Source: Octopus sinensis (Eukaryota). From it: a DNA stretch of 64,000 nt. A model generated the notes under the pieces. That model saw only the letters and a program-made list of their open reading frames with translations, did not search any database and was not told the origin of the DNA. Position numbers and translations under genes: made by a program. Below are positions 1,160 to 62,519 of this stretch, one piece after another. How positions within the stretch are numbered: the first letter of the stretch is position 1; every line of letters starts with the position of its first letter. The DNA is taken from contig NC_042999.1 in the NCBI RefSeq assembly GCF_006345805.1, positions 115,010,001 through 115,074,000 of the forward strand. Reading direction: 5' to 3'.

Positions 1160-2093
1160 TATTGATGATGAGTGGTGGTGGTGGTGGTCGTCGTCGTCGT
1201 CGTCGTCGTCGTGGTTGGTCTGTGGCGTGGTTATGATGATAATGATGGTGAAGGTGGAGTACTTATGGTGATACGATAATGATGATGATGATGACAACGA
1301 GGATGGGGGTATGATGTGGTTTTGGTGATGATAATGACGGCGAGGGAGATGCAGGGTGGGTTATGATGATGCAAACGGTTAAGAGATGAGGTGGTTCTAA
1401 AGATGATGATGATACTCATGGTAGCGGGGTGCTGGTGCTGCCGGTGCTGGTTGTGGTGGTAGTGGCGGTGCTGCTGCTGCTGCTGCTGATGATGATGATA
1501 GAATTGGTGGAGTGGTGGTTGTGGTGGTAGAGGTGGTGATGGTGCTGTTGTTCATGATGGTGAGGTGGCGGTGGCAGTGGTGGTGGTGGTGCTGGTGGTG
1601 GTGGTGGTGATGGTGCTGCTGTTCATGATGGTGAGGTGGCGGTGGCAGTGGCAGTGGTGGTGGTGATGGTGGTGGTTGTGGTTGTGGTGGTGGTGGTGGT
1701 GGTAGTTATGGTAGTGCTGGTGATAGTCGTGGTGGTGCTGGTGGTGCTGGCCGTCGTTGTCGTAATGGTGGTGGCGGTGATGGCTTTATTGCACATTGGT
1801 GCGTGTGTGTGAGATTGTGGTTGCGCTGCTCACTGTAGTAGCGGCACTCGTACTTTGTAATGGTGGTGACGGTGATAGCCGTAGAGGTGCTAGTTGATAT
1901 TATTGCTTGTGATAATTCTGAGAGCGGTGAGACAACGGCAATACCGATAGTGACGGTGATGCTGGAATTACAGTTTGGGGGAGGTGCTGGTGGGTGTGGT
2001 GACATAGGCGGTAGTGGTGGTAGCTTGGGTGGTTCTAATATCACTGACGGTGATATTTCTAGTGATGTTGCCACTACTACAACTACTACTACG

Positions 2094-2134
<41 letters not shown>

Positions 2135-2135
2135 G

Positions 2136-2180
<45 letters not shown>

Positions 2181-2345
2181 GTTACTACTACTACTACTAA
2201 AACTACTACTACAACTACTACTACTACTGCTGCTGTTTCTGCAACTATTACTACTACTACAGCTACTGTTACTACTACTACTATCACTACTATCTGCTAC
2301 TATCACTACTACTAGAATTTCCGTCATTACTAATACTACTGCTGC

Positions 2346-2401
<56 letters not shown>

Positions 2402-5526: not shown

Positions 5527-5827
5527 CGGTGGTGGTGGTGATGGTGGTGGTGAGTGGTGATGGTGGTGGTGATGGGGGTGAGGTGGGGTGTTGATGGTGT
5601 TAATGGTAATAGTAATGGTAGTGGTGGTAATGGTCGTAGTGGTGATTGTGGTAATGGTAGTGGTGGTGCTGGTTGTCATATTAGTTGTCGTCGTGATGGT
5701 GGTTTTGGTAGTAGTGGTGGTCGTCGTCGTGGTCGTGGTGGCGGCGGTAGCGGCGGTAGCGGCGGTAGCGGCGGTAGCGGCGGTAGCGGCGGCGGCGGCT
5801 GTAGCGGCGGCGGCGGCGGCGGCGGCG

Positions 5828-5863
<36 letters not shown>

Positions 5864-6185
5864 AGCGGCGGCGGCGGCGGCGGCGGTAGCGGCGGCGGGG
5901 CGGTAGCGGCGGCGGCGGCTGCGGTAGCGGCGGCGGCGGCGGTGGTAGTGGCGGCGGCGGCGGCGGCGGTAGCGGCGGCGGCGGCGGGCGGTAGCGGCGG
6001 CGGCGGCGGCGGCGGCAGTGGCGGCGGCGGCGGCGGCAGTGGCGGCGGCGGTGGTAGTGGCGGCGGCGGTAGGCGGCGGCGGCGGCGGTAGTGGCGGCGG
6101 CGGTAGTGGCGGCGGCGGTAGTGGCGGCGGCGGTAGTGGCGGCGGCGGTAGTGGCGGCGGCGGTAGTGGCGGCGGTGGTGGTGGT
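5527..6185. repeat. GC-rich (GGT)n grading into (GGC)n/(GGCGGTAGC)n/(GGCGGCGGTAGT)n
   Basis: Read directly. Confidence 0.95.
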
Positions 6186-8259: not shown

Positions 8260-8468
8260 GGCGGCGCGCTGGCAGAATCGTCAGCACACCAGACGAAATG
8301 CTTAGCGACATTTTTTCCATTCTGAGTTCAAATTCCACCGAGGCAGACTATACCTTTCATTCTTTAAGGGTTCGGTAAAATAAGTACCAGTTGAGCACCG
8401 GGGAACGATCTAATCGACTTATCCCCCTTTCCCGAAATTGCTGCCCAGTGTCAAAATTTGAAGCCAAT
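8260..8468 (+). mobile_element. SINE family B, full length
   Basis: Colinear with 2749-2965. Confidence 0.9.
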
Positions 8469-9570: not shown

Positions 9571-10475
9571 ATTATTCAGTTTTATTTCAAGATTCCTTAC
9601 CACTAGAGAAAGAGCCGGTATCTAACCAATATCCAAGGTTCCTTCACTGGAATTTCAACATCAACAACAGGGTATTTTTGTTTGTATGTATGCATATGTG
9701 CAAATTTGTATGTTTTGTTTTATGTATGTATTCTCATGCATAAAGTTGCATATACAGACATCTTCTAGAAAGTTTTACAGATTTTTTCAGTTCCGGTAAC
9801 GGATTGGATCTGTAGTCTTCTAATTAGCTTTCTCTTTACTGGTTTTGAGAAGCCTAATTTCTCGAGATTGGTATTTAGGCAGTGTGTTACATACCCCAGG
9901 GCCCCAATAATTACAGGTATAAACCTGAATTTGTAATCTGGATAGAGTAACTGCAGTTCAGCATAGATATTCTATTTTTCACTGATCTTCAGCTTTATGC
10001 TAATATCCGCTGGGCAACTAATTTCCACAACTGTGCACAGTTTCTCTTCTCTATCCCAAATCATTATATCAGGTCCCTTATGCTTACATTTCATTGAGGT
10101 CTTCATTGGGGCATTCCACCAGTATTCCTTTTTATTATGAGTGGCTATGGTTTCTACAATACTGTGGATTCTTATTTCTTCGTCCTCGAGGTTATCCTTT
10201 CGAAGAATTTCATTATAGAGTGTCCTATCTGCAACATCACATCTCATCAGTAGATAATACCGTGATGACATTTTCGGACAACTGCTTATGATGTGGGTGA
10301 TATCTTCGGTATTAACTCCACAAAGCCTGCATCGGTTGCCACATTTTACTGCTTTCCCTGCATCTCTAACCCTTTTGTGCATCAGGTACTTGGTTGATAT
10401 TTCCTGTTCCTGGATTGCAAATGCATACCCTTCAAAGTGGGAGGTAATAATCCGGCTATTAGCCCATGATAAACT
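9571..10475 (-). mobile_element. R4/Dong-like RLE non-LTR retrotransposon, 3' fragment (CCHC finger, PD-(D/E)xK nuclease, 3'UTR)
   Basis: CRLCGVNTEDITHIISSC, GPDIMIWDREEKLCTVVEISCP and IPVIIGALG motifs; ends ..aaataaaactgaataat; contains stops. Confidence 0.88.
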
Positions 10476-17050: not shown

Positions 17051-17304
17051 AGTCGAAATACATACTGACAAATATAGAACGCCTAATGTAGAATTTTTCC
17101 TTTTCGATACCATTTGTTGGCTTTTTTTTTTTTTAGTTAATATCGGACCAGATAGTTCTTCTGATTATTATGCTAAAGGAATGCGAAGATCACAAGTGTA
17201 GCCTTACTTCTTTAATATACTATTATATATATTTATCTGTATATATATGAATGAGTGGACAAACGAAAGGGCACTCAACACATTTATTGGGAGTTACATT
17301 TCTT

Positions 17305-17521
17305 TTATTCTTTTACTTGTTTCAGTCATTTGACGGCGGCCAAGCTGGAGCACCGCCTTTAGTCGAACAAATCAACCCAAGGACTTATTCTTTGTAAGCC
17401 TAGTACTTATTCTATCGGTCTCTTTCGCCGAACCGCTAAGTTACAGGGATGTAAACACACCAACATCGGTTGTCAAGCGATATGGTGGGGGACAAACACA
17501 GAATCACACACACACACACAC

Positions 17522-17553
<32 letters not shown>

Positions 17554-17559
17554 CATATA

Positions 17560-17628
<69 letters not shown>

Positions 17629-17880
17629 TATAAAAGAAATGAAGAAAATGCTGACAAAATAATTTAAGTAATTTAAGTAATTTAATTAGGTGAAGTTCTT
17701 TTTACCGGTTGCGCATTTGTTATGCTTATCAAAATTTTTTTAAGAGAGAAAGAGTTCCTTTCTGATAGATTTTTTCCTCTTGAGGAAAAAATCTACTTAA
17801 ATTATTTTGTCAGCATTTTCTTCATTTCCTTTTTTATATATCACAACTCGTGTTCCACATCTCCTTTTTTAAATATATAT

Positions 17881-17950
<70 letters not shown>

Positions 17951-18111
17951 CAACGGGCCTCTTTCAGTTTCCGTCTACCAAATCCACTCACAAGGCTTTG
18001 GTCGGCCAGAGGCTATAGTAGAAGACACTTGCCCAAGGTGCCAAGCAGTGGCACTGAACCCGGAACCATGTGGCTCGGAAGCAAGCTTCTTACCACACAG
18101 CCACTCCCGCG
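17305..18111 (-). mobile_element. SINE family A, full length, interrupted in its central microsatellite
   Basis: 3' half at 17305-17510, 5' half at 17950-18111. Confidence 0.92.
17629..17838. mobile_element. MITE-like element with ~42-bp TIRs inserted in the SINE (TA)n tract
   Basis: tataaaagaaatgaagaaaatgctgacaaaataatttaagta and its near-perfect reverse complement at 17794-17838. Confidence 0.8.
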
Positions 18112-24348: not shown

Positions 24349-24393
<45 letters not shown>

Positions 24394-24395
24394 CA

Positions 24396-24427
<32 letters not shown>

Positions 24428-24443
24428 CATATATATATGTACA

Positions 24444-24805
24444 TACTCTTTTACTTGTTTCAGTCATTTGACTGTGGCCATGCTAGAGCACCGCCTTTAG
24501 TCGAGCAAATCGACCCCAGGACTCATTCTTTGTAAGCCTAGTACTTATTATATCGGTCTCTTTTGCCGAACCGCTAAGTTACGGGAAAGTAAACACACCA
24601 GCATCGGTCGTCAAGCGATGTTGGGGTGACAAACAAAGACACACAAACACACACACATATATACATATATACGACGGGCTTCTTTCAGTTTCCGTCTACC
24701 AAATCCACTCACAAGGCTTTGGTCAGCCCGAGTCTATAGCAGAAGACACTTGCCCAAGGTGCCACGCAGTGGGACTGAACCCGGAACCATGTGGTTCGTA
24801 AGCAA
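24444..24805 (-). mobile_element. SINE family A, near full length
   Basis: Colinear reverse complement of 52880-53259. Confidence 0.95.
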
Positions 24806-26950: not shown

Positions 26951-27014
26951 TTTTAATAATTTAGATTCACATTGCACCATTAACATTCATTTCCTAATAT
27001 ATTTTATGTCATTT

Positions 27015-27165
27015 ACGTTCTGATTTCAAATTCCGCCGAGGTCGACTTTGCCTTTTATCATTTCAGGGTCGACAAATTAAGTACCAGTTACGTACTGGGA
27101 TCAATCTAATCGACTGGCCCCTTCCCCAAAAATTTCGGGCCTTGTGCCTAGAGAAGAAAAGAATA
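27015..27165 (+). mobile_element. SINE family B, 5'-truncated
   Basis: ttcaaattccgccgaggtcgactttgcc..taagtaccagttac. Confidence 0.9.
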
Positions 27166-27592
27166 TATTTTATGTTGTGATTTGCTTTTATATATTATAC
27201 AGTTATAGTTTATTCATAATGTCTTAAATTCTCTCCAAGTATATTTTTACGCTCTATAAATTTTATCCTTATGTCTATTCTTATTATTCCATATTTCTTT
27301 GTGCGTCCGTCTGAAAATGAATCTGTCCGAATGCGAGCATACTTGGATATGTTAACACTGATACCCTCCCATTAAACGAAGACTAACACCTCCTAATCAT
27401 CTCGCCCTTAATTCTCTACCTCCCATATATATAAGAAAAAAGTCAGGCAATAAATTTACTAATTTACTTTGGAAAACATGTTGCTTCAGAAACTTAACAA
27501 TTAACTAACATACAACACCACCTCGCATGGGTTCCATGCAAATACCTACTAACTACATCTTAAAAGCGACCTCACTAATACAATTAATATTA

Positions 27593-27805
27593 GTTTCAAT
27601 TTTGGACACAAGGCCATAAATTTCAGGGGAGGAGGTAAATCGATTACATCGACCCCAGTGCTTAATTAGTACTTATTTTATCGAATCCGAACGGACGAAA
27701 GACAAGGTCGACCTCGACGGAATTTGAACTCAGAACGTAGCAACAGACGAAATGCCGCTAAACATTTTGCCCGGCGTGATAACGATTCTGCCAGCTCGCC
27801 GCCTT
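27593..27805 (-). mobile_element. SINE family B, full length
   Basis: Ends ..gattctgccagctcgccgcctt. Confidence 0.92.
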
Positions 27806-28013
27806 TAATACACTTAGTATTATTGTTTATCTCAAATAAATTTTAATTGATCAATATACTCTGAGTATATGAAATATAAACGGTCCCTATAATTCTTTAA
27901 AATCTGTTCAATGAGTTGCTTTCCTAGCTTTTATTGTCTTCCTATTCTTTTCTATCTTTCGTGTGTGTAACTAATGAGAGAGGGGAATCTTTTCATTTTC
28001 GTCGCCTGGACGT

Positions 28014-28218
28014 CAGATTTTTCTAGTTAACTAAATAATTTGAAACTTCGTGTACTGGTAGAGTGTCTCAAAACAAAACACTAATTCCAATTTGTTTATT
28101 TGAGAAAAATCTATTTTATGACTTTAATCGTAGATTAAATCTGCGAATTTTAACCAATCATATTGTTTGTTTTCATATGTAATACTTTACTGCATTCTCT
28201 TAGTGTGACGTAGAAAGC
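28014..28218 (+). mobile_element. Solo arm of the long-TIR element family at 40970-42041
   Basis: cagatttttctagttaactaaataatttgaaacttcg..ttaaatctgcgaattttaaccaatcatattg shared with 40990-41205. Confidence 0.8.
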
Positions 28219-29360
28219 TTAATAAAATCTGTGCACAGTTTGGAAATTATTAACTAAGACGAGCAAATTATATTTCCGTCGTCTTAAATTTCGTTTTCGC
28301 TTCGAAAAATAATTTCTGTAACGTCGAGAGGTTCACATAATTCTGTCATTTACATTATTATCATTACAGCCTTAAAGTAAATCTTTGTCAATTTTCCGTT
28401 TTACCAGTGCCTCATTAAGAAGAGAACACGTGCGGAGGTCTGACTGTATTTTATTTAATTTCTGTTTAAAATTTTATACAAAACTAATAATTTTACAAAC
28501 AATTTTTAAAATGGCTAGTCTAGGTGAATTGTTTAGGTTTTCGCTTATTATTTACAATAACATACGTGAAATGTAAACAACTCGAAATAATGTAAACACT
28601 GAATCGGCCATACATACATACACACACACACATACATACACACACATACATACACATACATACACACACACATACATATATACATACACACATGCATTTT
28701 CGTATGTGTGTGTTTACGTGTAGTTCTGGGACTTTTTTGTTTTGTTATATTATCGATCGCGAACTTCCCGATTCTACATTTTCCGTCAAAGTGACCCTGC
28801 ACAGGTTTATTACTTAGTCCTAAACCAACCCTTTTCAAAGAGAACAATGACGAAAGGCTTTCCCAACTCAACCGTGACCATCACTTTTTCGAGTATCTAA
28901 CACTACATTATCGCACAGTCCCCTTTTTACAAAGGTTAGCAGTGAATATTTAGCTTCTATTTCTAGCAGGATAGGCAGTCGCTGTGTCTCGTCTTTCTTC
29001 CATTCCTTTTTTAAGGTGGTTTGGGAGTGGTTGGAGCTAAATAGCTGCTATTTCAAGCCGAACAAACAACCGCTTTGTCGCGTCTTTCACCCCCGTTTTA
29101 AAGATAGCTAGAAGTGGTGTAGATTTGACTGCTATTTCTAGCAACTGTGTCTGTCTCATATTTCTTTCCTTCTCAGCAGTAAGCAGTAATTGATTCTACA
29201 ACATAGAGGTTACTGGAGTGATTTCTATTGGAACTTTATGTTGTTATTTAACTCAAGGTCAACCTGATCGAAGAAAACCCACGATGATAAGACAATCTCA
29301 CTGTAATCTGTTCATTTTTTTTTTCCTGCAGGCATAAATTTCTGTATAACCGATAGTAGT

Positions 29361-32300
29361 GTGACATTTGAGAGAATTAACTGGCTGCTATTTCTATTTG
29401 CATTTGCATCACAAATTGTAACATCCTGCTTGCATACATGTATCATGCTTCAAAATGTATTACACACCTGTTGTACAATTGCAGTCCTGCTATGGACTCT
29501 TCTTCTATTCTTTGCATTTGCATCACAAATTGTAACATCCTGCTTGCATACATGTATCATGCTTCAAAATGTATTACACACCTGTTGTACAATTGCAATC
29601 CTGCTATGGACTCTTCTTCTATTCTTTGCATTTGCATCACAAATTCTAACATCCTGCTTGCATATATGTATCATGCTTCAAAATGTATTACACACCTGTT
29701 GTAGAATTGCAGTGCGGCCATGGACTCTTCTTCTATTCTTTGCATTTGCATCACAAATTGTAACATCCTGCTTGCATACATGTATCATGCTTCAAAATGT
29801 ATTACACACCTGTTGTACAATTGCAATCCTGCTATGGACTCTTCTTCTATTCTTTGCATTTGCATCACAAATTGTAACATCCTGCTTGCATATATGTATC
29901 ATGCTTCAAAATGTATTACACACCTGTTGTACAATTGCAGTGCGGCCATGGACTCTTCTTCTATTCTTTGCATTTGCATCACAAATTGTAACATCCTGCT
30001 TGCATACATGTATCATGCTTCAAAATGTATTACACACCTGTTGTACAATTGCAGTCCTGCTATGGACTCTTCTTCTATTCTTTGCATTTGCATCACAAAT
30101 TCTAATATCCTGCTTGCATACATGTATCATGCTTCAAAATGTATTACACACCTGTTGTACAATTGCAGTGCGGCCATGGACTCTTCTTCTATTCTTTGCA
30201 TTTGCATCACAAATTCTAACATCCTGCTTGCATACATGTATCATGCTTCAAAATGTACTACACACCTGTTGTACAATTGCAGTCCTGCTATGGACTCTTC
30301 TTCTATTCTTTGCATTTGCATCACAAATTCTAACATCCTGCTTGCATACATGTATCATGCTTCAAAATGTATTACACACCTGTTGTACAATTGCAGTCCT
30401 GCTATGGACTCTTCTTCTATTCTTTGCATTTGCATCACAAATTGTAACATCCTGCTTGCATATATGTATCATGCTTCAAAATGTATTACACACCTGTTGT
30501 ACAATTGCAGTCCTGCTATGGACTCTTCTTCTATTCTTTGCATTTGCATCACAAATTGTAACATCCTGCTTGCATACATGTATCATGCTTCAAAATGTAT
30601 TACACACCTGTTGTACAATTGCAGTCCTGCTATGGACTCTTCTTCTATTCTTTGCATTTGCATCACAAATTGTAACATCCTGCTTGCATACATGTATCAT
30701 GCTTCAAAATGTATTACACACCTGTTGTACAATTGCAGTCCTGCCATGGACTCTTCTTCTATTCTTTGCATTTGCATCACAAATTCTAACATCCTGCTTG
30801 CATACATGTATCATGCTTCAAAATGTATTACACACCTGTTGTACAATTGCAGTCCTGCCATGGACTCTTCTTCTATTCTTTGCATTTGCATCACAAATTC
30901 TAACATCCTGCTTGCATACATGTATCATGCTTCAAAATGTATTACACACCTGTTGTACAATTGCAGTCCTGCCATGGACTCTTCTTCTATTCTTTGCATT
31001 TGCATCACAAATTCTAACATCCTGCTTGCATATATGTATCATGCTTCAAAATGTATTACACACCTGTTGTACAATTGCAGTCCTGCTATGGACTCTTCTT
31101 CTATTCTTTGCATTTGCATCACAAATTGTAACATCCTGCTTGCATACATGTATCATGCTTCAAAATGTATTACACACCTGTTGTACAATTGCAGTCCTGC
31201 TATGGACTCTTCTTCTATTCTTTGCATTTGCATCACAAATTCTAACATCCTGCTTGCATATATGTATCATGCTTCAAAATGTATTACACACCTGTTGTAC
31301 AATTGCAGTCCTGCTATGGACTCTTCTTCTATTCTTTGCATTTGCATCACAAATTCTAACATCTTGCTTGCATACATGTATCATGCTTCAAAATGTATTA
31401 CACACCTGTTGTACAATTGCAGTCCTGCTATGGACTCTTCTTCTATTCTTTGCATTTGCATCACAAATTGTAACATCCTGCTTGCATATATGTATCATGC
31501 TTCAAAATGTATTACACACCTGTTGTACAATTGCAGTGCGGCCATGGACTCTTCTTCTATTCTTTGCATTTGCATCACAAATTCTAACATCCTGCTTGCA
31601 TACATGTATCATGCTTCAAAATGTATTACACACCTGTTGTACAATTGCAGTCATGCTATGGACTCTTCTTCTATTCTTTGCATTTGCATCACAAATTGTA
31701 ACATCCTGCTTGCATACATGTATCATGCTTCAAAATGTATTACACACCAGTTGTACAATTGCAATCCTGCTATGGACTCTTCTTCTATTCTTTGCATTTG
31801 CATCACAAATTGTAACATCCTGCTTGCATACATGTATCATGCTTCAAAATGTATTACACACCTGTTGTACAATTGCAGTCCTGCTATGGACTCTTCTTCT
31901 ATTCTTTGCATTTGCATCACAAATTCTAACATCCTGCTTGCATACATGTATCATGCTTCAAAATGTATTACACACCTGTTGTACAATTGCAGTCCTGCTA
32001 TGGACTCTTCTTCTATTCTTTGCATTTGCATCACAAATTCTAACATCCTGCTTGCATACATGTATCATGCTTCAAAATGTATTACACACCTGTTGTACAA
32101 TTGCAGTCCTGCTATGGACTCTTCTTCTATTCTTTGCATTTGCATCACAAATTGTAACATCCTGCTTGCATACATGTATCATGCTTCAAAATGTATTACA
32201 CACCTGTTGTACAATTGCAGTCCTGCTATGGACTCTTCTTCTATTCTTTGCATTTGCATCACAAATTCTAATATCCTGCTTGCATACATGTATCATGCTT

Positions 32301-33614
32301 CAAAATGTATTACACACCTGTTGTACAATTGCAGTCCTGCTATGGACTCTTCTTCTATTCTTTGCATTTGCATCACAAATTCTAACATCCTGCTTGCATA
32401 CATGTATCATGCTTCAAAATGTATTACACACCTGTTGTACAATTGCAGTCCTGCTATGGACTCTTCTTCTATTCTTTGCATTTGCATCACAAATTCTAAC
32501 ATCCTGCTTGCATACATGTATCATGCTTCAAAATGTATTACACACCTGTTGTACAATTGCAGTCCTGCTATGGACTCTTCTTCTATTCTTTGCATTTGCA
32601 TTACAAATTCTAACATCCTGCTTGCATACATGTATCATGCTTCAAAATGTATTACACACCTGTTGTACAATTGCAGTCCTGCTATGGACTCTTCTTCTAT
32701 TCTTTGCATTTGCATCACAAATTCTAACATCCTGCTTGCATACATGTATCATGCTTCAAAATGTATTACACACCTGTTGTACAATTGCAGTCCTGCTATG
32801 GACTCTTCTTCTATTCTTTGCATTTGCATCACAAATTGTAACATCCTGCTTGCATATATGTATCATGCTTCAAAATGTATTACACACCTGTTGTACAATT
32901 GCAATCCTGCTATGGACTCTTCTTCTATTCTTTGCATTTGCATCACAAATTGTAACATCCTGCTTGCATACATGTATCATGCTTCAAAATGTATTACACA
33001 CCTGTTGTACAATTGCAATCCTGCTATGGACTCTTCTTCTATTCTTTGCATTTGCATCACAAATTGTAACATCCTGCTTGCATACATGTATCATGCTTCA
33101 AAATGTATTACACACCTGTTGTACAATTGCAGTCCTGCTATGGACTCTTCTTCTATTCTTTGCATTTGCATCACAAATTCTAACATCCTGCTTGCATATA
33201 TGTATCATGCTTCAAAATGTATTACACACCTGTTGCACAGTTGCTGTCCTGCCATGGACTCTTCTTCTATTCTTTGCATTTGCATCACAAATTCTAACAT
33301 CCTGCTTGCATATATGTATCATGCTTCAAAATGTATTACACACCTGTTGCACAATTGCTGTCCTGCCATGGACTCTTCTTCTATTCTTTGCATTTGCATC
33401 ACAAATTCTAACATCCTGCTTGCATATATGTATCATGCTTCAAAATGTATTACACACCTGTTGTACAATTGCAGTGCGGCCATGGACTCTTCTTCTATTC
33501 TTTGCATTTGCATCACAAATTGTAACATCCTGCATTAAAATTGATTTACTCTTTATTTGGTTTTGTTTCTGCTTTTGTTTACATTGTGTGCATGCCTTGT
33601 TATGGTTTATGTGA
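29361..33614 (+). CDS. Hypothetical 1417-aa repeat ORF, possibly non-coding read-through of the array
   Basis: Open frame spanning the whole array; acceptor-like ttttttttttcctgcAG at 29330-29331 leads into this frame; no recognisable domain and no clear synonymous bias among variants. Confidence 0.15.
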   Translation: MTFERINWLLFLFAFASQIVTSCLHTCIMLQNVLHTCCTIAVLLWTLLLFFAFASQIVTSCLHTCIMLQNVLHTCCTIAILLWTLLLFFAFASQILTSCLHICIMLQNVLHTCCRIAVRPWTLLLFFAFASQIVTSCLHTCIMLQNVLHTCCTIAILLWTLLLFFAFASQIVTSCLHICIMLQNVLHTCCTIAVRPWTLLLFFAFASQIVTSCLHTCIMLQNVLHTCCTIAVLLWTLLLFFAFASQILISCLHTCIMLQNVLHTCCTIAVRPWTLLLFFAFASQILTSCLHTCIMLQNVLHTCCTIAVLLWTLLLFFAFASQILTSCLHTCIMLQNVLHTCCTIAVLLWTLLLFFAFASQIVTSCLHICIMLQNVLHTCCTIAVLLWTLLLFFAFASQIVTSCLHTCIMLQNVLHTCCTIAVLLWTLLLFFAFASQIVTSCLHTCIMLQNVLHTCCTIAVLPWTLLLFFAFASQILTSCLHTCIMLQNVLHTCCTIAVLPWTLLLFFAFASQILTSCLHTCIMLQNVLHTCCTIAVLPWTLLLFFAFASQILTSCLHICIMLQNVLHTCCTIAVLLWTLLLFFAFASQIVTSCLHTCIMLQNVLHTCCTIAVLLWTLLLFFAFASQILTSCLHICIMLQNVLHTCCTIAVLLWTLLLFFAFASQILTSCLHTCIMLQNVLHTCCTIAVLLWTLLLFFAFASQIVTSCLHICIMLQNVLHTCCTIAVRPWTLLLFFAFASQILTSCLHTCIMLQNVLHTCCTIAVMLWTLLLFFAFASQIVTSCLHTCIMLQNVLHTSCTIAILLWTLLLFFAFASQIVTSCLHTCIMLQNVLHTCCTIAVLLWTLLLFFAFASQILTSCLHTCIMLQNVLHTCCTIAVLLWTLLLFFAFASQILTSCLHTCIMLQNVLHTCCTIAVLLWTLLLFFAFASQIVTSCLHTCIMLQNVLHTCCTIAVLLWTLLLFFAFASQILISCLHTCIMLQNVLHTCCTIAVLLWTLLLFFAFASQILTSCLHTCIMLQNVLHTCCTIAVLLWTLLLFFAFASQILTSCLHTCIMLQNVLHTCCTIAVLLWTLLLFFAFALQILTSCLHTCIMLQNVLHTCCTIAVLLWTLLLFFAFASQILTSCLHTCIMLQNVLHTCCTIAVLLWTLLLFFAFASQIVTSCLHICIMLQNVLHTCCTIAILLWTLLLFFAFASQIVTSCLHTCIMLQNVLHTCCTIAILLWTLLLFFAFASQIVTSCLHTCIMLQNVLHTCCTIAVLLWTLLLFFAFASQILTSCLHICIMLQNVLHTCCTVAVLPWTLLLFFAFASQILTSCLHICIMLQNVLHTCCTIAVLPWTLLLFFAFASQILTSCLHICIMLQNVLHTCCTIAVRPWTLLLFFAFASQIVTSCIKIDLLFIWFCFCFCLHCVHALLWFM
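29392..33533. repeat. 114-bp tandem minisatellite, ~36.3 units, no indels
   Basis: Unit ctcttcttctattctttgcatttgcatcacaaatt(g/c)taacatcctgcttgcata(c/t)atgtatcatgcttcaaaatgtattacacacctgttgtacaattgcagtcctgctatgga; 38-aa periodicity in the ORF track. Confidence 0.99.
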
Positions 33615-34919: not shown

Positions 34920-36058
34920 GCCATTTAGTCACCTACCAATCTGGTAGACACACTAGTCAAATTGACTACATCCTCACTAGGAAACAGGAAAGACGACTAC
35001 TTGTAAATGCCCAAACCTTCCCAGGTGAAGAATGTACCCCACAATATAGATTAGTAGTTAGCGACTTCAGGATCAGGGCTAAATGGATGCCCAGAAGACG
35101 ACCAGAATGGAGGAGAAGGGTCTGGAAGCTTAAGGATCCTGCAAAAAGAGATTGAGAGACATATTACTCAAAGCTGGGGAAGACAACTGGAGTTTTCTAC
35201 AGGACAACCTTTTGAGGGCTAGTGACGAGATCTGTGGATGGTGCAAAGTCTCCTCTCAACCCAAGGTAACGTAATGGTGGAACAATGTTGTTGACAGGGC
35301 TAGTAAGGAAAAGAAACAGGCTTTGAAGGACTGGAAGACTGGTGATAGCAGGGAATGGTATCAGACTGCCAAAAGGGAAGCTAGGAGATAGGTTTATTTG
35401 GCCAGAGGGGAAGCAGATAAGGAAAATTTTGCCAATGTTCTGCGCCGTGATGACCAAAGACTTGAAGTATTTTCCTGTTGCCAGACAGTGTGTGAGAGAG
35501 AATCACGATGTCCTAGGAGAGAAATGTGTCCTCATGGGTGACGGTTCACTTGCTGCAAAGAGACAGGTTTGGAGACGCCATTATGAAAGTTTGCTAAATA
35601 AAGTGAATGAATGTGAGAAAGAGAGTCAGCCGAATGCCGGCCCAACAGAGGGACCAGCTATCTATCTAAAATTGACGTGCCTTGTAGGTAAAGCAATTAA
35701 GGGTATGAAGACAGGGAAAGCCCCCGGACAATCAGGAATCACCACAGAGATGCTCAAACTATCTAGTGGTGTCGGCTATAGCCTACTCAACTAGGTGATA
35801 CATGAAGGAGTCATACCCAATGACTGGTGTAGCAGCACCATAGTCAACTGCTAACAAAGGTAAAGGTGACGCATTAGATACAAATAATTACAGAGGTATC
35901 AAGTTGTTGGATCAGGTAATGAAGGTCACGGAGAGGGGTATAGCCCAAGTAATTAGGGAGAGAGGCAGTTTAGATGAGATGCAGTTTCAGTTCGTGCCAG
36001 GGGAAAGCACCACTGATGCTATATTTCTGATAAGACAGATGCAGGAGAAATAGCTAGT
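34920..36058 (+). mobile_element. RTE-clade LINE ORF2 fragment (end of APE domain to RT N-terminus), decayed
   Basis: SQIDYILTRK..PGEECTPQ, WKLKDPA, KAIKGMKTGKAPGQSGITTEMLK, NNYRGIKLLDQVMKVTER, STTDAIFLIRQMQEK. Confidence 0.93.
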
Positions 36059-36140
36059 CCAAGCCAAGCCAAGCCAAGCCAAGCCAAGCCAAGCCAAGCC
36101 AAGCCGAGCCAAGCCAAGCCAAGCCGAGCCAAGCCAAGCC
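36059..36140. repeat. (AAGCC)n pentanucleotide array, ~16 units
   Basis: Read directly. Confidence 0.97.
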
Positions 36141-39049: not shown

Positions 39050-39398
39050 TTACTTTTAATGTTACTCTTGACCGCGGCCATGCTGGAGCATCGCCTTTAA
39101 TCGAGCAACTAGACCCCGGGACTTATTCTTTTTGTAAGCCCAGTACTTATTCTATCGGTCCTTTTGCCGAACCGCTAAGTAACGGGGACATAAATACACC
39201 AGTATCGGTTGTCAAGCAATGCTAGGGGGACAAACACAGACACACAAACACACACACATACATTATATATATATATATATATGACGGGCTTCTTTCAGTT
39301 TCCGTCTACCAAATCCACTCACAAGGCTTTGGTTGGCCCGAGGTTATAGTAGAAGACACTTGCCCAAGGTGCCAGACAGTGGGACTGAACCCGGAATC
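39050..39398 (-). mobile_element. SINE family A, near full length
   Basis: Colinear with the other family A copies. Confidence 0.93.
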
Positions 39399-40384: not shown

Positions 40385-40849
40385 TATGTTTTAGATGGTG
40401 TATATTCCGTTATGTAGGAATTTAATTTTAAAAAATTCTGTGGTTAGGAAGAGAGGTTTCGGGAAATTCACATGAGTTGACTTTGTTTCCTCATAACTTG
40501 GGTATTTTTTAATGAAATTTGCTACAAATACTTTTCAGAATGTATACATTCAGATTATATTGGAATTCGATGTGAAAAGGAAAATAGTGGCACACATCAC
40601 AATTTCTTTCGAAATCTCAAGTTTCATTTTGTACATATATATGATATCCATTAGTACATATGTGCATAAAAACCCACCATTTTTGTATTTTCTTTGGTCA
40701 TATAAAACCCCAGCATTTTCGATAGCCGCCTCATGAAAAAGTGAAAGTCTTTCTTCGGCAATTTCTTGATTTCAGCAACTATTTTCGGAAAAAAAAAATT
40801 TGCCCCCTACCCCTCCACCTCCAGTTTCTTCATCTCGCTTGTTTCCGTA

Positions 40850-40968
40850 ACTCTAATCCTAAATCCCAAACCTAACCCTAAAACCCAAAACCAAACCCTA
40901 ACTCTAAAACCCTAACCATAAAACCTAGCTCTAAAACCCTAACCCTAAGACCCTAACCTTAAAACCAA
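40850..40968. repeat. Degenerate interstitial (CCCTAA)-like tract
   Basis: accctaa/aaaccctaac variants; also (CCCTAA)3 at 39008-39028. Confidence 0.75.
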
Positions 40969-40969
40969 A

Positions 40970-41606
40970 CCCGGATTTTCTTTTGAAAGCCAGATTTTTC
41001 AGATTTTCTAGTTAACTAAATAATTTGAAACTTCGTATACTGGTAGAATGTGTGTGAAAAGAAAAACAATAATTTCAACTAGTTTTTTGACAAAAATATA
41101 TTTTATAAGTTTAAACGTAGTTTAAATCTGCGAATTTTAACCAATCATATTGTCTGTTTTCATTTGAAATTATTAGCTGCATAGTGTTAATGTGACGTAG
41201 ATAGCTATTTTGTGAGTGGGTAAGCAGTAAGCAAACAGCTGTGGTAGATGTGGTTATCATGGCAGTGGTGGTAGTGGTGACAGGTGTTTTTGTAGAGGTG
41301 GTGGTGGTGGCGGCAGTGGATGATGATGATAATGATGATGATAGTAGTAGTAGCATTGATAATGTTAGGATGTCTCATGGATGGTAGTGTTGGTGTGTGT
41401 GTGTGTATGTATGGATCAAAACAGTCTGATTCAAATTCTGTGGTACATATATATTCATACATACATATACATGTAGATGTATATAACATATATATATTGT
41501 ATGTAAACATCGTTTATATATATATATATAATGTATGCATCTATAATACACACACATTATAAATATATACACATATATGCATATGCATTAGAATATGTGT
41601 GTATAG

Positions 41607-41677
<71 letters not shown>

Positions 41678-42041
41678 TATGTTTGTATACATGTGTGTGT
41701 AGCTATTTAGGATTACCACAAATTTTATATATACTCCACGAAGTTTATGATAAGCGGAGATGTTTACATTTTAGTTAGCTGTTTACGTTAACTACGTCAC
41801 AAAATAGCTGTTTACGTCACAGTAACAATATTTTGAGAAGCAGTAAATAATATGAGGCCGAAAGAAAGAATATCATTGGTTAAAATTCGAATTTTTAAAC
41901 AACGTCAAACTTAGAAATTACAATTCCGTTTTCATTTTGGTTAACAATTATGTTTTCTTTTGACACATTCTACCAGTATACGAAGTTTCAAATTGTTTAG
42001 TTGACTAGGAAAATTTGGCTTTCAAAAAGAAAAGATCCGAG
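40970..42041. mobile_element. Foldback/long-TIR non-autonomous DNA element (~235-bp arms around microsatellites)
   Basis: Left cccggattttcttttgaaagcc..ctagttaactaaataatttgaaacttcgtatactggtagaatgtgt; right arm is its diverged reverse complement ending ggctttcaaaaagaaaagatccg. Confidence 0.8.
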
Positions 42042-42086
42042 AGGGGGAGAGAGTGAAGCGTAGATGATTCTAAGAAGTGAGAGGCT

Positions 42087-42735
42087 GAATAAAGAGGGAG
42101 TTGACGTAAACTCACAAGAGAAAGAGCGTGAAATTGATAGTGACATTTATATAAGAGTGAGGTAGAGGAGAAATAATTACCATGAACAGTTTTCATGTCC
42201 TATTAATGTTTTATAATAAAATATAATAGATATCATATTCGTAGCATTTGATTTTTCAGGAAAAAAATTTCATTAACTCCGTTTAAATACTTTGAGATCT
42301 TGAATAAAGCGGGAGTTGACGTAAACTCACAAGAGAAAGAGCGTGAAATTGATAGTGACATTTATATAAGAGTGAGGTAGAGGAGAAATAATTACCATGA
42401 ACAGTTTTCATGTCCTATTAATGTTTTATAATAAAATATAATAGATATCATATTCGTAGCATTTGATTTTTCAGGAAAAAAATTTCATTAACTCCGTTTA
42501 AATACTTTGAGATCTTGAATAAAGCGGGAGTTGACGTAAACTCACAAGAGAAAGAGCGTGAAATTGATAGTGACATTTATATAAGAGTGAGGTAGAGGAG
42601 AAATAATTACCATGAACAGTTTTCATGTCCTATTAATGTTTTATAATAAAATATAATAGATATCATATTCGTAGCATTTGATTTTTCAGGAAAAAAATTT
42701 CATTAACTCCGTTTAAATACTTTGAGATCTTGAAT
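42087..42735. repeat. 215-bp tandem repeat, 3 near-identical units
   Basis: gaat unit boundaries at 42087, 42302, 42517 and 42732. Confidence 0.97.
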
Positions 42736-43326
42736 ATAGCTTGAAGTCTTACTTGTTCTAAAAAATGCATAATTATAATAATTTATTTATTTATATCATC
42801 ATAATTGCAAAAATTACCTCATGATGTTTACAGATATGCATGACACAACTGCGTCTTTAGTCACATCCTGACTCCCGCTTAACCTTTATATATGTATCTA
42901 AATTTACACACGTTTACGAGCGCATGCATTGAAACATTCACACATATATAAATACACATATACAGGAAACCTTAGAATTTTTCTATTCTTGAAGCGAAAG
43001 AATACACTCAACTAAAGACATTGATTTATATACCAATATTTCAAACAAGAACAGTTCAAGCAAATGCAAATAGAGGGAAATGTGATAAATAAATATGCAG
43101 TGACGTCACAAGTTTTGCTACGTCTTGATATTATTCCCCCTCCAACCCCCCCCTCTTCCTACATAAGTTTCCATGTCTGTTTCACCCACTTTCTCTTATA
43201 TGTTTAATTCATCTCCTGCTTTATTCAGCCTTTCATTTCTTAGAATCCTCTGTTTCTCTCTCTCTTTCTCTTTCTCTTTCTCTCTCTCTCTCTTTCTCTC
43301 TCTGCCCTCTCTCTCTCTCTCCCTCC

Positions 43327-45915: not shown

Positions 45916-46166
45916 GGTATGTTGATGCAAACAGGAAAAACAGAACTCAAAATATGACTATGTGTATTTTTATTAATATTTAACAGATGCAACAGAGTGA
46001 CTCAAGGTCTGAGAGTTTCGTGCGTTGGTACTCTATTATTCCAGCTAAATATGTATGTGTGTGTGTGTGTACCTTTTTCTCTTTTTACTTCTTTCAGTCA
46101 TTAGACTGCAGCCATACTGGAGTATTGCATTGAAGAATTTTTAGTCGAATAAGTCGACCCCAGTAC

Positions 46167-46197
<31 letters not shown>

Positions 46198-46479
46198 ACT
46201 GAACTGCTCAGTTATCGGGGCCGTAAACACTTCACCACCGGTTGTGAAACGGTGGTGCAAGAACAGACACGAAGACACACGCACACACACACAATTTTCG
46301 TAGCTTAGTTTTTCCTTGGGGCTGGCCAGATCGGAGCGATCTCAAGATTAATCAGCCGAAATTGCGAGGATGATCCGGTTCTTGACTGAAGATTGAGGGC
46401 TTCGAATGTCCCGTCCGTGTTTTTTGTATCGTCTTCTAAATGTTTTGCGTTCTTGTCCCAGTTTGTTTGTTTTTTATAT

Positions 46480-46512
<33 letters not shown>

Positions 46513-46683
46513 ATATATATACTATATATATATATATATATATACGACAGGCTTCATTCAGTTCCCGTCTGCCCAGTCTGCTTACTAGGCTACAGTAGAA
46601 GACACTTCTTCAAGGTGTCACACATTGGGACTTAACTCTGAGCTATATGATTGGGAAGCAAGCTTCTCGCCACACAGCCACGC

Positions 46684-46745
<62 letters not shown>

Positions 46746-46885
46746 ATATCGACTGTATACTTTCAGTTTCCATCTACCAACTCCACTCAAAAGCCTTTGG
46801 CCAGCCCAAGGCTAAATAAAAGACACTTGCCTATGGTGCCACGCAGTAGGACTGAATCCAAGATGACATGATTGGGAAGCAAACC
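45586..46885 (-). mobile_element. Cluster of SINE family A fragments (45586-45835, 46075-46265, 46545-46685, 46750-46885)
   Basis: gtcattagactg.ggccatgct.g and gtagaagacactt..caaggtg motifs. Confidence 0.8.
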
Positions 46886-51594: not shown

Positions 51595-51755
51595 ATGACA
51601 GGCTTCTTCTTCAGTTCCGTCTACTAAATCCATTAACAAGGCTTTTGTCGGCCTGAAGGTATAGTAGAAGACATGTGACCAAGTTACCACGCAGCGAGAC
51701 TGAACCCGGAATCATGTGCTTGGGAAGCAAGTTTCTTACTATACAGCCACGCCTG
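51595..51755 (-). mobile_element. SINE family A 5' half
   Basis: ttccgtctactaaatcc..gactgaacccggaatcatgtg. Confidence 0.85.
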
Positions 51756-52881: not shown

Positions 52882-53800
52882 CGCAGGAGTGGCAGTGTGG
52901 TAAGTAGCTTGCTAACCAGCCACATGGTTCCGGGTTCAGTCCCACTGCGTGGCACCTTGGGCAAATGTCTTCTGCTATAGCCCTGGGCCGACCAATGCCT
53001 TGTGAGTGGATTTGGTAGACGGAAACTGAAAGAAGCCCGTCGTATATATGTATATATATATATGTGTGTGCGTGTATCTTTGTGTGCCTGTGTTTGTCCC
53101 CCTAGCATTGCTTGACAACCGATGCTGGTGTGTTTACGTCCCCGTTACTTAGCGGTTCGGCTTACGAAAGAATAAGTCCCGGGATCGAGTTGCTCGATTA
53201 AAGGCGGTGCTCCAGCATGGCCGCAGTCAAATGACTGAAACAAGTAAAAGAGTAAAAGATATATATAATATATAATATATATATATATTATATATATATA
53301 TATATATAATGCACCTAGGAATTGTTTCTGTTTTTAGGCTCCACATTCGAGATCTCTATTTCCAGATCTTTGTATTTTGAAAGTTTCACCGTTTCTTTAG
53401 AGAAACATTGTCATCTGTTGGTATTGATACATCGATTAGAGAGCATTTTTTTTCTTGGTGATCTCTGACAACTATGTCCTGCCTATTGGCCTTAATTTCT
53501 CTATCTGTGTGTATTGGCATATCCCAGAGTATGGTTGTTTTCTCATTTTCTGTGATCATCTTTTTTTTCTGGTGTCATTTCATAGTGTTGGTATAGCTTC
53601 CAGTGTATATAGGTCCTAACTCTGTCGTGTCTGTGAATATATTCCTTCTTAGCTGGGACTGGGCAACCAGAGACAATATGATTTATTGTTTCTTCTCCAT
53701 CACCACATATTCTGCAGTTACTTGTATTTCTTTTCATTGCGTGTTTTTTGTTGGTTTCTGGTGGGAAGGCGTTGATCTTGTGCTGCAATTAAAAATCCTT
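52598..53800 (-). mobile_element. R4/Dong-like RLE LINE 3' fragment between two (TAA)n tracts, split by a SINE
   Basis: GFLIAAQDQ, CRICGDGEETINHIVSGCP..EYIHRHD, LIDVSIPTDDNVSLKE..KYKDLEIEI, then NIQKIVLLGTAHILHKTLSIQ* and aaataaaactactg(aat)n. Confidence 0.9.
52880..53259 (+). mobile_element. SINE family A, full-length reference copy
   Basis: ggcgcaggagtggcagtgtggtaag (A box), gggttcagtccc (B box), tail caagtaaaagagtaaaag. Confidence 0.95.
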
Positions 53801-53859: not shown

Positions 53860-54018
53860 GTCTTTACTTTCTGAGTTCAAATTCCGCCGAGGTCGACTTT
53901 GTCTTTTATTCTATTGAGATCGGTAAAGTATGTTCCAGTTGAGCACTGGCGTCGATGTAATCGACTTACCCTCTCCCAAAAATTACTGACCTTGTGCCAA
54001 AATTTGAAACTAGTAAAC

Positions 54019-54198: not shown

Positions 54199-54420
54199 AA
54201 GTAGTACTAAGGTGGCGAGCTAATAGAATCGTTAACACGCCGGGAAAATGCTTAGCGGCATTTTATCCATCTTCACGTTCTGAATTCAAATTCCACCGAG
54301 GTCGACTTTGCCTTTCGTCCTTTCGGGGTCAATAAACTAAGTGCCAGTGAAACACTGGAATCGATGTAATCGACTATCCCTTTCCCCAATATTTGAGGCC
54401 TTGTACGTATAATTAAAGAA
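53860..54420 (+). mobile_element. Two SINE family B copies (53860-54015 and 54209-54420) around an (AGT)n/(AGC)n tract
   Basis: gagttcaaattccgccgaggtcgacttt and aaggtggcgagctaatagaatcgttaac. Confidence 0.9.
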
Positions 54421-54846
54421 AGGATTATTATTATCATTATTACTAGTTTTTTTTTTATTCTTTCAATTTTGTTTCCATTTCTTGCCGAATATCTTCCCGA
54501 CATCTAGGGCAAAGAAACTCACAGTATACATTGGTAGGCCATTAAAATAAACACACTAGATTGTTCATTTACAAAGTAATGTAATTGAAAAAAGCAACAA
54601 AAAAAAGAAAAGGAAAAGGAAAGGGAAAAAGAAAAAGGAAAATGGCAAAAGAGAAAAGAAAATAGAAAAAAAGTTAAAAATTCACAGAGAAAATGCTCTT
54701 CTCAATGCATGTGACATGTCAATTAAAACAATCTTTTGTACTTCTTGCATGGATGGTAAACCAGGGATCATTTAAAAATAATTTTCAGTTCCTTTCTTCA
54801 TCATTTCATGTTCTCCAACAATCACTGGTATTGTAACCACCTTAAG

Positions 54847-55384: not shown

Positions 55385-55595
55385 TTCTCATTTACTCATT
55401 TACTTGTTTCAGTCATTTGACTGCGGCCATGCTGGAGCACCACCTTTAGTCGAGCAAATCGACCCCGGGACTTATTCTTTGTAATCCCAGTACTTATTCT
55501 ATCGGTTTCTTTTGCCGAACCGCTAGGTGACGGGAACGTAAACACACCAGCATCGGTTGTCAAGCAATGCTAGGGGGACAAACACAGACACACAA

Positions 55596-55628
<33 letters not shown>

Positions 55629-55745
55629 CATATATACGACAGGCTTCTTTCAGTTTCCGTCTACCAAATCCACTCACAAGGCATTGGTCGGTCCGGGGCT
55701 ATAGCAGAAGACACTTGCCCAAGGTGCCACGCAGTGGGACTGAAT
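55385..55745 (-). mobile_element. SINE family A, near full length
   Basis: Colinear with the other family A copies. Confidence 0.94.
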
Positions 55746-61674: not shown

Positions 61675-62519
61675 AAAACTGTATGATGATTCTTCACAAC
61701 CATCCCTTGGGGGAAGGTTAATTACTTTAAAACACGAATTCAGGGCTCTGAGCGAAAATCTTCGCAGCTGCAAACGAATTTTTTAACTAGTTTGTATAAG
61801 TCACAAGTTTGCTTCTAACTCACAGACAGTATATAGAGAGGTGAGAAAGGAAAAGATTAACGTTAAGGAAGCCTCCTCTCAAGAAGATCTTGAATCATTC
61901 TGATTGGAAATCTGGGACGAAAAGAGGAATCTCAACTTCAATGCATTGTGGCTAAATACAGTAAAGAGAGAATACTGGACCAACATCAGCAGTTAAACAT
62001 ATGCAATTGACCCGCAAATGTTCACCTTAGCTATAGGCAGACTGCATAATGGAAAGGTACTTGGAAGGGACCTAATAGTTGGATACTGGTATAAGAGGCT
62101 GACATTTTACAGGAAACCACTAATAAGTATATTCAAAAGTACTATGGAAAATCAGATTGACATACCAAATTGGCTTGTACCAGTGAATTTTGTGGCCAAA
62201 ATTGAAACCACCGAGTTACCTGAAAACTGCAGGCCCATTGCTTGTCTAAACATTATGTACAAACTGTACACAAGCTGCCTCAACCAATTCCTCGAGGATC
62301 ATTGTAAGTCCAACAACATAGTGACTGATGTGCAGACAGGTTGAAAGAAGTGGCCGTGGGGACGTGACGAACAACTTCTGATAAACAAAGCTGTACTGTC
62401 TGAGATAAAAAAAAATTTTTTAAACCATCGTAGGAAGGCATTTGATTCTATTCCCCACTAGGTTCTTGTTTCCTTGAACTAAGAAGGAAATTTCAATTTG
62501 TCGAGATTTTTTGTAGGCA

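What the first reader, a model, noticed from the sequence alone, without database searches (positions are those of the whole stretch)
29332..33614. 4.1-kb indel-free 114-bp array open in two overlapping frames, with an in-frame splice acceptor
Seen: about 36 units of 38 codons. Frame A (LLFFAFASQIVTSCLHTCIMLQNVLHTCCTIAVLLWTL) is open for 1417 aa. Frame B (MDSSSILCICITNSNILLAYMYHASKCITHLLYNCSPA) is open for 1272 aa after a single variant TAG at 29702. A strong acceptor (t10-cctgcAG, 29330-29331) enters frame A in phase 1. No unit has an indel, although nearby SSRs have many. Against coding: my manual tally of about 17 variant sites gives roughly equal silent counts in frames A and B, and a unit length divisible by 3 makes long ORFs easy to get. 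Inference: either a young Cys-rich hydrophobic repeat protein or de novo exon, or a neutral minisatellite.
Basis: partly seen in the sequence, partly recalled or inferred. Interest (0 to 1): 0.7.

Follow-up and report, generated by a model that had tools for sequence, protein, structure and literature searches.

The report
Ordinary young 114-bp minisatellite
The 4.1-kb stretch is a real, very regular tandem repeat in transposon- and microsatellite-rich octopus DNA, and its two long "open reading frames" are best explained as a by-product of repeating a stop-free unit whose length divides by three, not as a gene.

Summary
There are 36.3 head-to-tail copies of a 114-bp unit at 29397-33533, 97% alike and without indels. 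Two same-strand frames are open (1417 aa and 1272 aa), one TAG interrupts frame B at 29702, and a T10-CCTGCAG acceptor-like motif ends at 29331.

None of this needs a coding explanation:
- The consensus unit has no stop in two frames, which happens in 4-17% of comparable 114-mers.
- Only 16 columns vary. Substitutions split 5 silent / 11 replacement / 0 stop in frame A and 6 / 9 / 1 in frame B, matching neutral expectation.
- Simulating 16 neutral substitutions reproduces "A open, B at most one stop" in 49% of runs.
- The common frame-A variants are radical (Leu to Pro, Leu to Arg, Thr to Ile).
- Neither frame has a credible homologue among billions of proteins, which include Octopus bimaculoides annotations, and neither has a Pfam domain.
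- Variants are shuffled among units in the mosaic pattern typical of minisatellites.
- The surroundings are SSRs, SINE-like repeats and a broken LINE, and I recognised no exon.

Verdict: a neutral, recently expanded or homogenised minisatellite. Transcription through the acceptor-like site cannot be excluded without RNA data. Interest is low.

The parts
29397..33533 (.). Minisatellite array: 36 full units of 114 bp plus a 33-nt partial unit. It contains 20 distinct unit types and has sharp boundaries with unique flanks.
   Evidence: TRF, register table, probe count. No degenerate units in the flanks and no higher-order period. The unit is absent elsewhere in the window.
29361..33614 (+). Frame A ORF (1417 aa, GTG-to-stop as listed mechanically). 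Interpreted as a by-product of the repeat, not a gene. The consensus unit FAFASQILTSCLHTCIMLQNVLHTCCTIAVLLWTLLLF has no Asp, Glu, Lys or Arg.
   Evidence: ORF list. Variants are 5 silent / 11 replacement / 0 stop. No homologues, no Pfam match.
29720..33538 (+). Frame B ORF (1272 aa, starts at an ATG present in every unit). Interpreted as a by-product of the repeat.
   Evidence: ORF list. Variants are 6 silent / 9 replacement / 1 stop. No homologues. Only sub-threshold Pfam scores with no individual matching stretch, inflated by the repeats.
29702..29704 (+). Singleton TAG in frame B (column 79 C>G, unit 3).
   Evidence: About 0.65 stops are expected among 16 neutral substitutions in frame B.
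29315..29331 (+). Acceptor-like motif T10-CCTGC-AG, 66 nt upstream of the array. Function untested.
   Evidence: Sequence. 17 of 20 upstream bases are pyrimidines. 10 sites on the + strand and 8 on the - strand are equal or better in the window. There are 6 (+) and 7 (-) T-run+YAG motifs.
29304..29306 (+). TAA that closes frame A upstream and limits the open lead-in to 29307-29396.

Best explanation
This is a non-coding minisatellite (VNTR-type tandem repeat) in intergenic or intronic, repeat-rich DNA of an octopod genome.

How it most likely arose and behaves:
- A 114-bp segment was amplified head-to-tail. The array has since been kept homogeneous by unequal exchange and gene conversion between units. 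This mechanism is inferred.
- The unit happens to lack stop codons in two of its six frames, and 114 is divisible by 3. Every copy therefore continues the same two frames, and the ORFs are automatically as long as the array.
- The array is young or recently homogenised. There are about 16 substitution events, 7 of them private to one unit, and mean pairwise difference is 2.4%. Too few mutations have occurred to break frame A. One has already broken frame B.
- The hydrophobic, Cys-rich 'protein' reflects the T-rich, G-poor composition and the recurring TTGCAT/TGTA motifs of the DNA.
For: Shown:
- The array is real, with 0 indels and 16 variable columns.
- The consensus is stop-free in +0 and +2 only. 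Two or more open frames is a 4-26% event for comparable 114-mers.
- Of all 342 possible single substitutions, 24% are silent and 3.8% make a stop in frame A (22% and 4.1% in frame B). Observed counts are 5/11/0 and 6/9/1.
- In a simulation of 16 substitutions with the observed transition:transversion split, P(A open) = 0.54, P(A open and B with at most 1 stop) = 0.49, P(at least 5 silent in A) = 0.46 and P(at least 6 silent in B) = 0.17.
- High-frequency variants are radical in frame A: L>P in 10 units, L>R in 5, T>I in 10.
- No protein relative was found for frame A or B in 5.8 billion clusters. That collection does hold O. bimaculoides annotations.
- An exhaustive phmmer search of frame A gave one hit at 26% identity. 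The hit is itself a protein with a repeat of roughly 38 residues (period judged by eye), so I read it as a periodicity artefact.
- There is no Pfam domain.
- Variants are arranged as a mosaic. 11 of 36 column pairs show all four allele combinations, and there are 20 unit types with no higher-order period.
- The context is SSRs, SINE-like repeats and a broken LINE at 34926-36063, with no recognisable exon. There are no Rfam or tRNA matches.
- The strand has no unusual fold (z = -0.41).
Against: - A good acceptor-like motif sits 66 nt upstream of the array, inside the short open lead-in of frame A. That is a 1-8% coincidence, judged after the fact.
- Zero indels is mildly unlikely if the indel:substitution ratio is high (P about 0.05-0.3).
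- With only 16 variable sites the silent/replacement test has little power to detect weak constraint. Frame B shows a non-significant excess of silent changes.
- No transcript, population or orthologue data could be consulted.
Confidence: 0.85

Rival explanations
1. The array is transcribed as part of an exon entered through the acceptor at 29331, but as non-coding RNA or as a 3' UTR. In two of the three phases an exon starting at 29332 stops after 2 codons (GCA TAA) or 8 codons (...CGA TAG). The minisatellite is then a passenger in the transcript.
For: The acceptor-like motif has 17/20 pyrimidines and no intervening AG. Early stops occur in two phases (sequence, frame check). AATAAA lies at 33802, about 190 nt after the frame-A stop. 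No GTRAG donor occurs inside the array, so nothing would splice it out.
Against: Equivalent motifs occur 10-13 times per 64 kb on both strands in DNA with no recognised exons. No upstream exon could be recognised at 24.8-29.3 kb. AATAAA is frequent in AT-rich DNA.
Confidence: 0.1
2. The array is a young or de novo protein-coding exon. Frame A (through the acceptor) or frame B (from the ATG at 29720) would be translated into a Cys-rich repeat protein of about 1,300-1,400 aa.
For: The unit length is divisible by 3. ORFs of 1417 and 1272 aa exist. There are no indels. An acceptor-like site precedes frame A and an ATG is present in each unit for frame B. Cys makes up 10.5% of both frames.
Against: The substitution pattern is neutral in both frames and common changes in frame A are radical. 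Frame B is already interrupted. Two frames are open at once and equally Cys-rich, which points to a property of the DNA. No credible homologue or domain was found. The frame-A unit has no charged residue over 1,400 aa, which is unlike characterised repeat proteins (own knowledge). The ORFs are fully expected by chance.
Confidence: 0.03
3. The array belongs to a transposable element. It could be a monomer array in the 5' region of the LINE that lies downstream (as in mouse L1 promoters), or an internal minisatellite of another element.
For: An RTE-like LINE fragment lies on the same strand 1.4 kb downstream, at 34926-36063. Many minisatellites arise inside transposons (own knowledge; also the subject of PMC3389668, seen by title and abstract only).
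Against: The LINE copy appears 5'-truncated, because homology to the O. bimaculoides copy starts only at 34926. The 1.4 kb between it and the array is unique sequence. The one O. bimaculoides copy examined has no such array within 10 kb. The other LINE and SINE fragments in the window lack the unit. No terminal inverted repeats flank the array.
Confidence: 0.03
4. The array acts as a cis-regulatory or protein-binding element. One example would be a cluster of 37 POU-type octamer sites (ATTTGCAT, one per unit) that acts as an enhancer or a factor sink.
For: 37 of the 39 + strand ATTTGCAT copies in the window lie in the array, one per unit.
Against: The motif was picked after the fact from hundreds of known 8-mers. 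From base composition alone I estimate well under 1% for this particular 8-mer in a 114-mer (my own rough estimate, not computed with a tool), but the chance of finding some known motif is high. No nearby gene was identified, and there are no conservation or binding data.
Confidence: 0.02

Closest known systems
Non-coding minisatellites / VNTRs (for example the human hypervariable loci MS32 and CEB1; own knowledge)
   Same: Head-to-tail units of tens to about a hundred bp, array length of a few kb, single locus with unique flanks, and unit variants interspersed as a mosaic that implies exchange or conversion between units.
   Different: The unit (114 bp) is at the upper end of the usual range. 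The sequence is AT-rich rather than the GC-rich type of the classical human loci. Copy-number polymorphism could not be examined.
Coding VNTRs / tandem-repeat protein genes (mucin VNTR exons, PRDM9 zinc-finger arrays with 84-bp units; own knowledge)
   Same: Unit length divisible by 3, an open frame spanning the whole array, and very high identity between units.
   Different: Two frames are open here, substitutions are neutral, frame A changes are radical, there is no domain or homologue, and no gene structure was identified.
Monomer arrays in LINE 5' UTRs (mouse L1 A/Tf monomers of about 200 bp; own knowledge)
   Same: A tandem array of a unit about 100-200 bp long, upstream of and on the same strand as a LINE fragment.
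   Different: The array is not contiguous with the LINE (1.4 kb of unique spacer and a 5'-truncated copy). It has 36 copies rather than a handful. It is absent from the related O. bimaculoides copy.

Membership tests
Non-coding minisatellite (VNTR) | Tandem head-to-tail units of roughly 10-100+ bp forming an array of 0.5-30 kb | tested here: met
   114 bp x 36.3 copies = 4137 bp, TRF score 7819.
Non-coding minisatellite (VNTR) | Single locus embedded in unique DNA, unlike satellite blocks | tested here: inconclusive
   The unit is absent from the other 60 kb of the window, and the flanks are unique within it. The rest of the genome could not be searched. There were no matches in the prokaryotic, viral or metagenome collections.
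Non-coding minisatellite (VNTR) | Interspersed unit variants indicating exchange or conversion between units | tested here: met
   20 unit types. 11 of 36 column pairs show all four allele combinations. There is no higher-order period.
Non-coding minisatellite (VNTR) | No coding constraint on unit variants | tested here: met
   5/11/0 and 6/9/1 (silent/replacement/stop) match neutral expectation, with simulated P = 0.46 and 0.17. Power is low with 16 sites.
Non-coding minisatellite (VNTR) | Copy-number polymorphism among individuals | not testable with these tools
   No second haplotype or population data were available.
Coding tandem-repeat exon | Unit length divisible by 3 and a frame open through the whole array | tested here: met
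   114 = 38 x 3. Frame A is open for 1417 aa. This is expected by chance in a sizeable fraction of such arrays.
Coding tandem-repeat exon | Purifying selection: excess of silent or conservative changes in the coding frame | tested here: not met
   Frame A proportions are neutral, with L>P, L>R and T>I at high frequency. Frame B carries a stop.
Coding tandem-repeat exon | Recognisable homologues or a protein domain | tested here: not met
   nothing apart from one periodicity artefact.
Coding tandem-repeat exon | Transcript with splice junctions or translation evidence | not testable with these tools
   No RNA-seq or Ribo-seq was accessible. Only an acceptor-like motif is present.
LINE 5'-UTR monomer array | Array contiguous with the 5' end of a full-length LINE on the same strand | tested here: not met
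   LINE homology starts at 34926, in the C-terminal part of the endonuclease. The 1.4 kb of spacer is unique.
LINE 5'-UTR monomer array | The same monomer found upstream of other copies of the element | tested here: not met
   L001, an O. bimaculoides copy 84-86% identical in DNA, has no 114-bp array within 10 kb. Only one copy was examined.

The most novel reading that the evidence does not exclude
A lineage-restricted gene born from the minisatellite. The T10-CCTGCAG acceptor would splice an upstream exon into frame A, and the array would be translated into a roughly 1,400-residue, uncharged, Cys-rich hydrophobic repeat protein. It would be so young that selection has not yet left a signature in the 16 variable sites.
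Probability: 0.03. Interest if true: 0.7.

Novelty: new member of a known kind. Interest (0 to 1): 0.1.

Why it matters
It matters little for biology and somewhat more as a calibration case. A tandem repeat whose unit length divides by 3 and lacks stops will always show array-long ORFs, sometimes in two frames at once. In an SSR- and minisatellite-rich cephalopod genome many such pseudo-ORFs should be expected by chance. They should not be annotated as proteins without transcript evidence or a selection signature. If the unlikely coding reading were true, it would be a clean example of de novo gene birth from a minisatellite.

Tried and rejected
- **Protein homology of both frames.** Two word-indexed searches and one exhaustive phmmer run gave nothing usable. 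The single hit, P0121, is another protein with a repeat of roughly 38 residues at 26% identity, and I rejected it as a periodicity artefact.
- **Pfam on both frames.** Only sub-threshold scores with no individual matching stretch, inflated by the repeats (ParE-like and UBA_ARI1). Rejected.
- **Unit 24-mer in the metagenome, prokaryotic-genome and viral collections.** No matches. No eukaryotic genome DNA collection was available, so neither the orthologous locus nor other arrays could be retrieved.
- **LINE-monomer idea.** I fetched one O. bimaculoides copy of the neighbouring LINE and found no array there.
- **Degenerate old units or inverted terminal repeats in the flanks.** None found.
- **Higher-order repeat structure.** None. 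Units two apart are slightly more alike than expected (P = 0.03).
- **Structured RNA or DNA.** No Rfam families, no tRNAs, and a fold z-score of -0.41.
- **Exons around the array.** Stop-to-stop ORFs checked by eye and with Pfam showed only transposon fragments.
- **Literature on octopus minisatellites or satellite DNA.** Two searches found nothing specific.

Full report
**Observation**

Tandem Repeats Finder reports a single array at 29397-33533 with period 114, 36.3 copies, 97% matches and 0% indels. Cutting it into strict 114-nt registers shows 36 full units plus a 33-nt partial unit. There is no register shift, only 16 columns vary, and there are 20 distinct unit types.

- The mechanical ORF list gives 29361-33614 (+, 1417 aa, frame A) and 29720-33538 (+, 1272 aa, frame B).
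- Frame B is closed at 29702-29704 by a singleton C>G in unit 3.
- T10 (29315-29324), CCTGC and then AG (29330-29331) precede the array.
- Frame A is open upstream only to the TAA at 29304-29306.

**Are the open frames more than chance?**

The array is. The open frames are not.

- The consensus unit has no stop in frames +0 and +2, and 1-5 stops in the other four frames.
- At least two stop-free frames occur in 7% of shuffles of the unit (3.8% on one strand). They occur in 26% of 114-mers drawn from this window (17% on one strand).
- From base composition alone, one frame of 38 codons stays open with P = 0.15.
- One third of unit lengths are divisible by 3. A few per cent of minisatellites should therefore show exactly this picture (inference).

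**Test for coding constraint**

- Of the 342 possible single substitutions of the consensus, 24% are silent and 3.8% make a stop in frame A. The figures are 22% and 4.1% in frame B.
- The 16 observed variable columns split 5 silent / 11 replacement / 0 stop in frame A and 6 / 9 / 1 in frame B.
- I simulated 16 substitutions with the observed 8:8 transition:transversion split:
  - Frame A stays open in 54% of runs.
  - "A open and B with at most one stop" occurs in 49% of runs.
  - At least 5 silent changes in A occur in 46% of runs.
  - At least 6 silent changes in B occur in 17% of runs.
- The most frequent frame-A changes are radical: L>P in 10 units, L>R in 5 and T>I in 10.
- The consensus frame-A unit has no Asp, Glu, Lys or Arg at all.
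- Cys is 10.5% in both frames against 3% expected from composition. This traces to the recurrent TTGCAT and TGTA motifs of the DNA.
- Zero indels has P of about 0.05-0.3, depending on the assumed indel:substitution ratio. The 215-bp x3 tandem repeat at 42086-42740, which cannot be in frame, is also indel-free.
- The indel-rich neighbours are microsatellites, which mutate by slippage (own knowledge).

**Relatives**

- Six units of frame A and of frame B were searched against 5.8 billion protein clusters without any hit at E <= 0.001.
- That collection does contain Octopus bimaculoides annotations, because it returned one for the neighbouring LINE.
- An exhaustive phmmer run of frame A against 1.84 billion representatives gave one hit (E = 2e-6, 26% identity). 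Its sequence is itself a repeat of roughly 38 residues (period judged by eye), which I read as a periodicity artefact.
- Pfam gives nothing above threshold.
- A 24-nt unit probe is absent from the metagenome, prokaryotic-genome and viral collections.
- No eukaryotic genome collection was available, so allelic and orthologous arrays could not be examined.

**Array dynamics**

- Variants are interspersed rather than blocked. 11 of 36 pairs of polymorphic columns show all four combinations.
- There is no higher-order period.
- Units two apart are only slightly more alike than expected (P = 0.03).
- Seven of the 16 variants are private to one unit.
- This mosaic is expected from repeated unequal exchange and conversion in a young or continually homogenised minisatellite. 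The mechanism is inferred from established knowledge of minisatellites.
- The boundaries are sharp, and the flanks hold no degenerate units.

**Surroundings**

- The window is packed with microsatellites: the TRF table has 142 rows, nearly all of them short-period repeats.
- It also holds SINE-like dispersed repeats and retrotransposon fragments.
- Several repeat families are shared at 70-87% DNA identity with an O. bimaculoides chromosome segment (L001, CM046602.1). This supports an octopod origin.
- A frameshifted RTE-like LINE that appears 5'-truncated lies at 34926-36063 (+). Its O. bimaculoides relative has no 114-bp array within 10 kb. It is also separated from the array by 1.4 kb of unique DNA, so the array is not a LINE monomer array.
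- I recognised no exon within several kb on either side.
- There are no Rfam families or tRNAs, and the strand has no unusual fold.

**The acceptor-like site**

- With 17 of 20 pyrimidines and no intervening AG it is a good match. However, 10 sites on the + strand and 8 on the - strand of this window are as good or better.
- There are 6 (+) and 7 (-) T-run+YAG motifs.
- The chance of one falling in the 90-nt lead-in is roughly 1-8%, judged after the fact.
- "In frame" adds little. Phase is free, and in the other two phases an exon starting at 29332 stops after 2 or 8 codons.
- I therefore keep a 10% rival in which the array is a passenger in a non-coding or UTR exon, and 3% for real translation.

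**Comparison and verdict**

The locus meets the testable criteria of a non-coding minisatellite. It fails the selection and homology criteria of a coding tandem-repeat exon, and it fails the criteria of a LINE monomer array. It is a new instance of a well-known kind of sequence, with no feature that a specialist would find surprising. Its main value is as a reminder that array-long ORFs in repeats with unit lengths divisible by 3 are expected artefacts. Interest is 0.1.

Noticed in passing
window 29397-33533: Every unit contains the canonical POU/Oct octamer ATTTGCAT (37 of the 39 + strand copies in the window) and a 10-bp palindrome ATACATGTAT. This was noticed after the fact, and its significance is unknown.
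   Followed up: partly
window 29397-33533: The array is almost CpG-free. The consensus has none, and observed/expected is 0.04 against 0.74 for the window. The only CpGs come from the derived GTGCGGCC variant carried by 5 units.
   Followed up: no
window 34926-36140: A frameshifted RTE-like LINE fragment that appears 5'-truncated (endonuclease C-terminus plus reverse transcriptase N-terminus). It is 84-86% identical in DNA to an O. bimaculoides copy annotated 'craniofacial development protein 2-like'. It runs into a (CCAAG)16 repeat at 36059-36140.
   Followed up: partly
window 17296-18098, 24383-24805, 39113-39391, 46075-46884, 51615-51744, 52895-53308, 55399-55744: Multiple copies of a SINE-like dispersed repeat, often flanked by (AT)n or (TA)n. 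The same family is present in O. bimaculoides at L001 19265-19695.
   Followed up: partly
window 27007-27166 (-) and 27587-27808 (+); also 2752-2922, 8263-8439, 53860-54009, 54208-54428: A second dispersed repeat family. Two copies form a 153-nt inverted pair 420 nt apart, 1.6 kb upstream of the array.
   Followed up: no
window 28013-28219, 40999-41206, 41806-42017 (-): A third dispersed repeat of about 210 bp, 72-85% identical between copies.
   Followed up: no
window 42086-42740: Another young tandem repeat: 215 bp x 3.0 copies, 99% identical and indel-free. It serves as a non-coding comparator for the 'no indels' argument.
   Followed up: partly
window 40849-40966: A degenerate telomere-like (CCCTAA)n tract, that is, an interstitial telomeric sequence.
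   Followed up: no
window 1512-2401 and 5528-6175: Very long trinucleotide repeats: (GTG) about 91 copies, (ACT) about 80, (TAG) about 19, (GGT) about 72 and (GGC) about 145. They generate spurious low-complexity ORFs of 150-330 aa on both strands.
   Followed up: no
window 9972-10382 (-), 53546-53788 (-), 61997-62341 (+): Further retrotransposon debris. Two ORFs give weak matches to the zinc-binding tail of reverse transcriptases (zf-RVT). A third looks like a reverse transcriptase by eye but has no Pfam match.
   Followed up: partly
window 28947-28963, 29038-29054, 29117-29143, 29378-29394: A short motif, (T/G)GCTGCTATTTC(TAGCA), recurs four times in the 450 nt left of the array. The last copy abuts the first unit and resembles the unit's own CCTGCTAT...TTCTATTC end. 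It may be a relic of the progenitor sequence, or chance.
   Followed up: no
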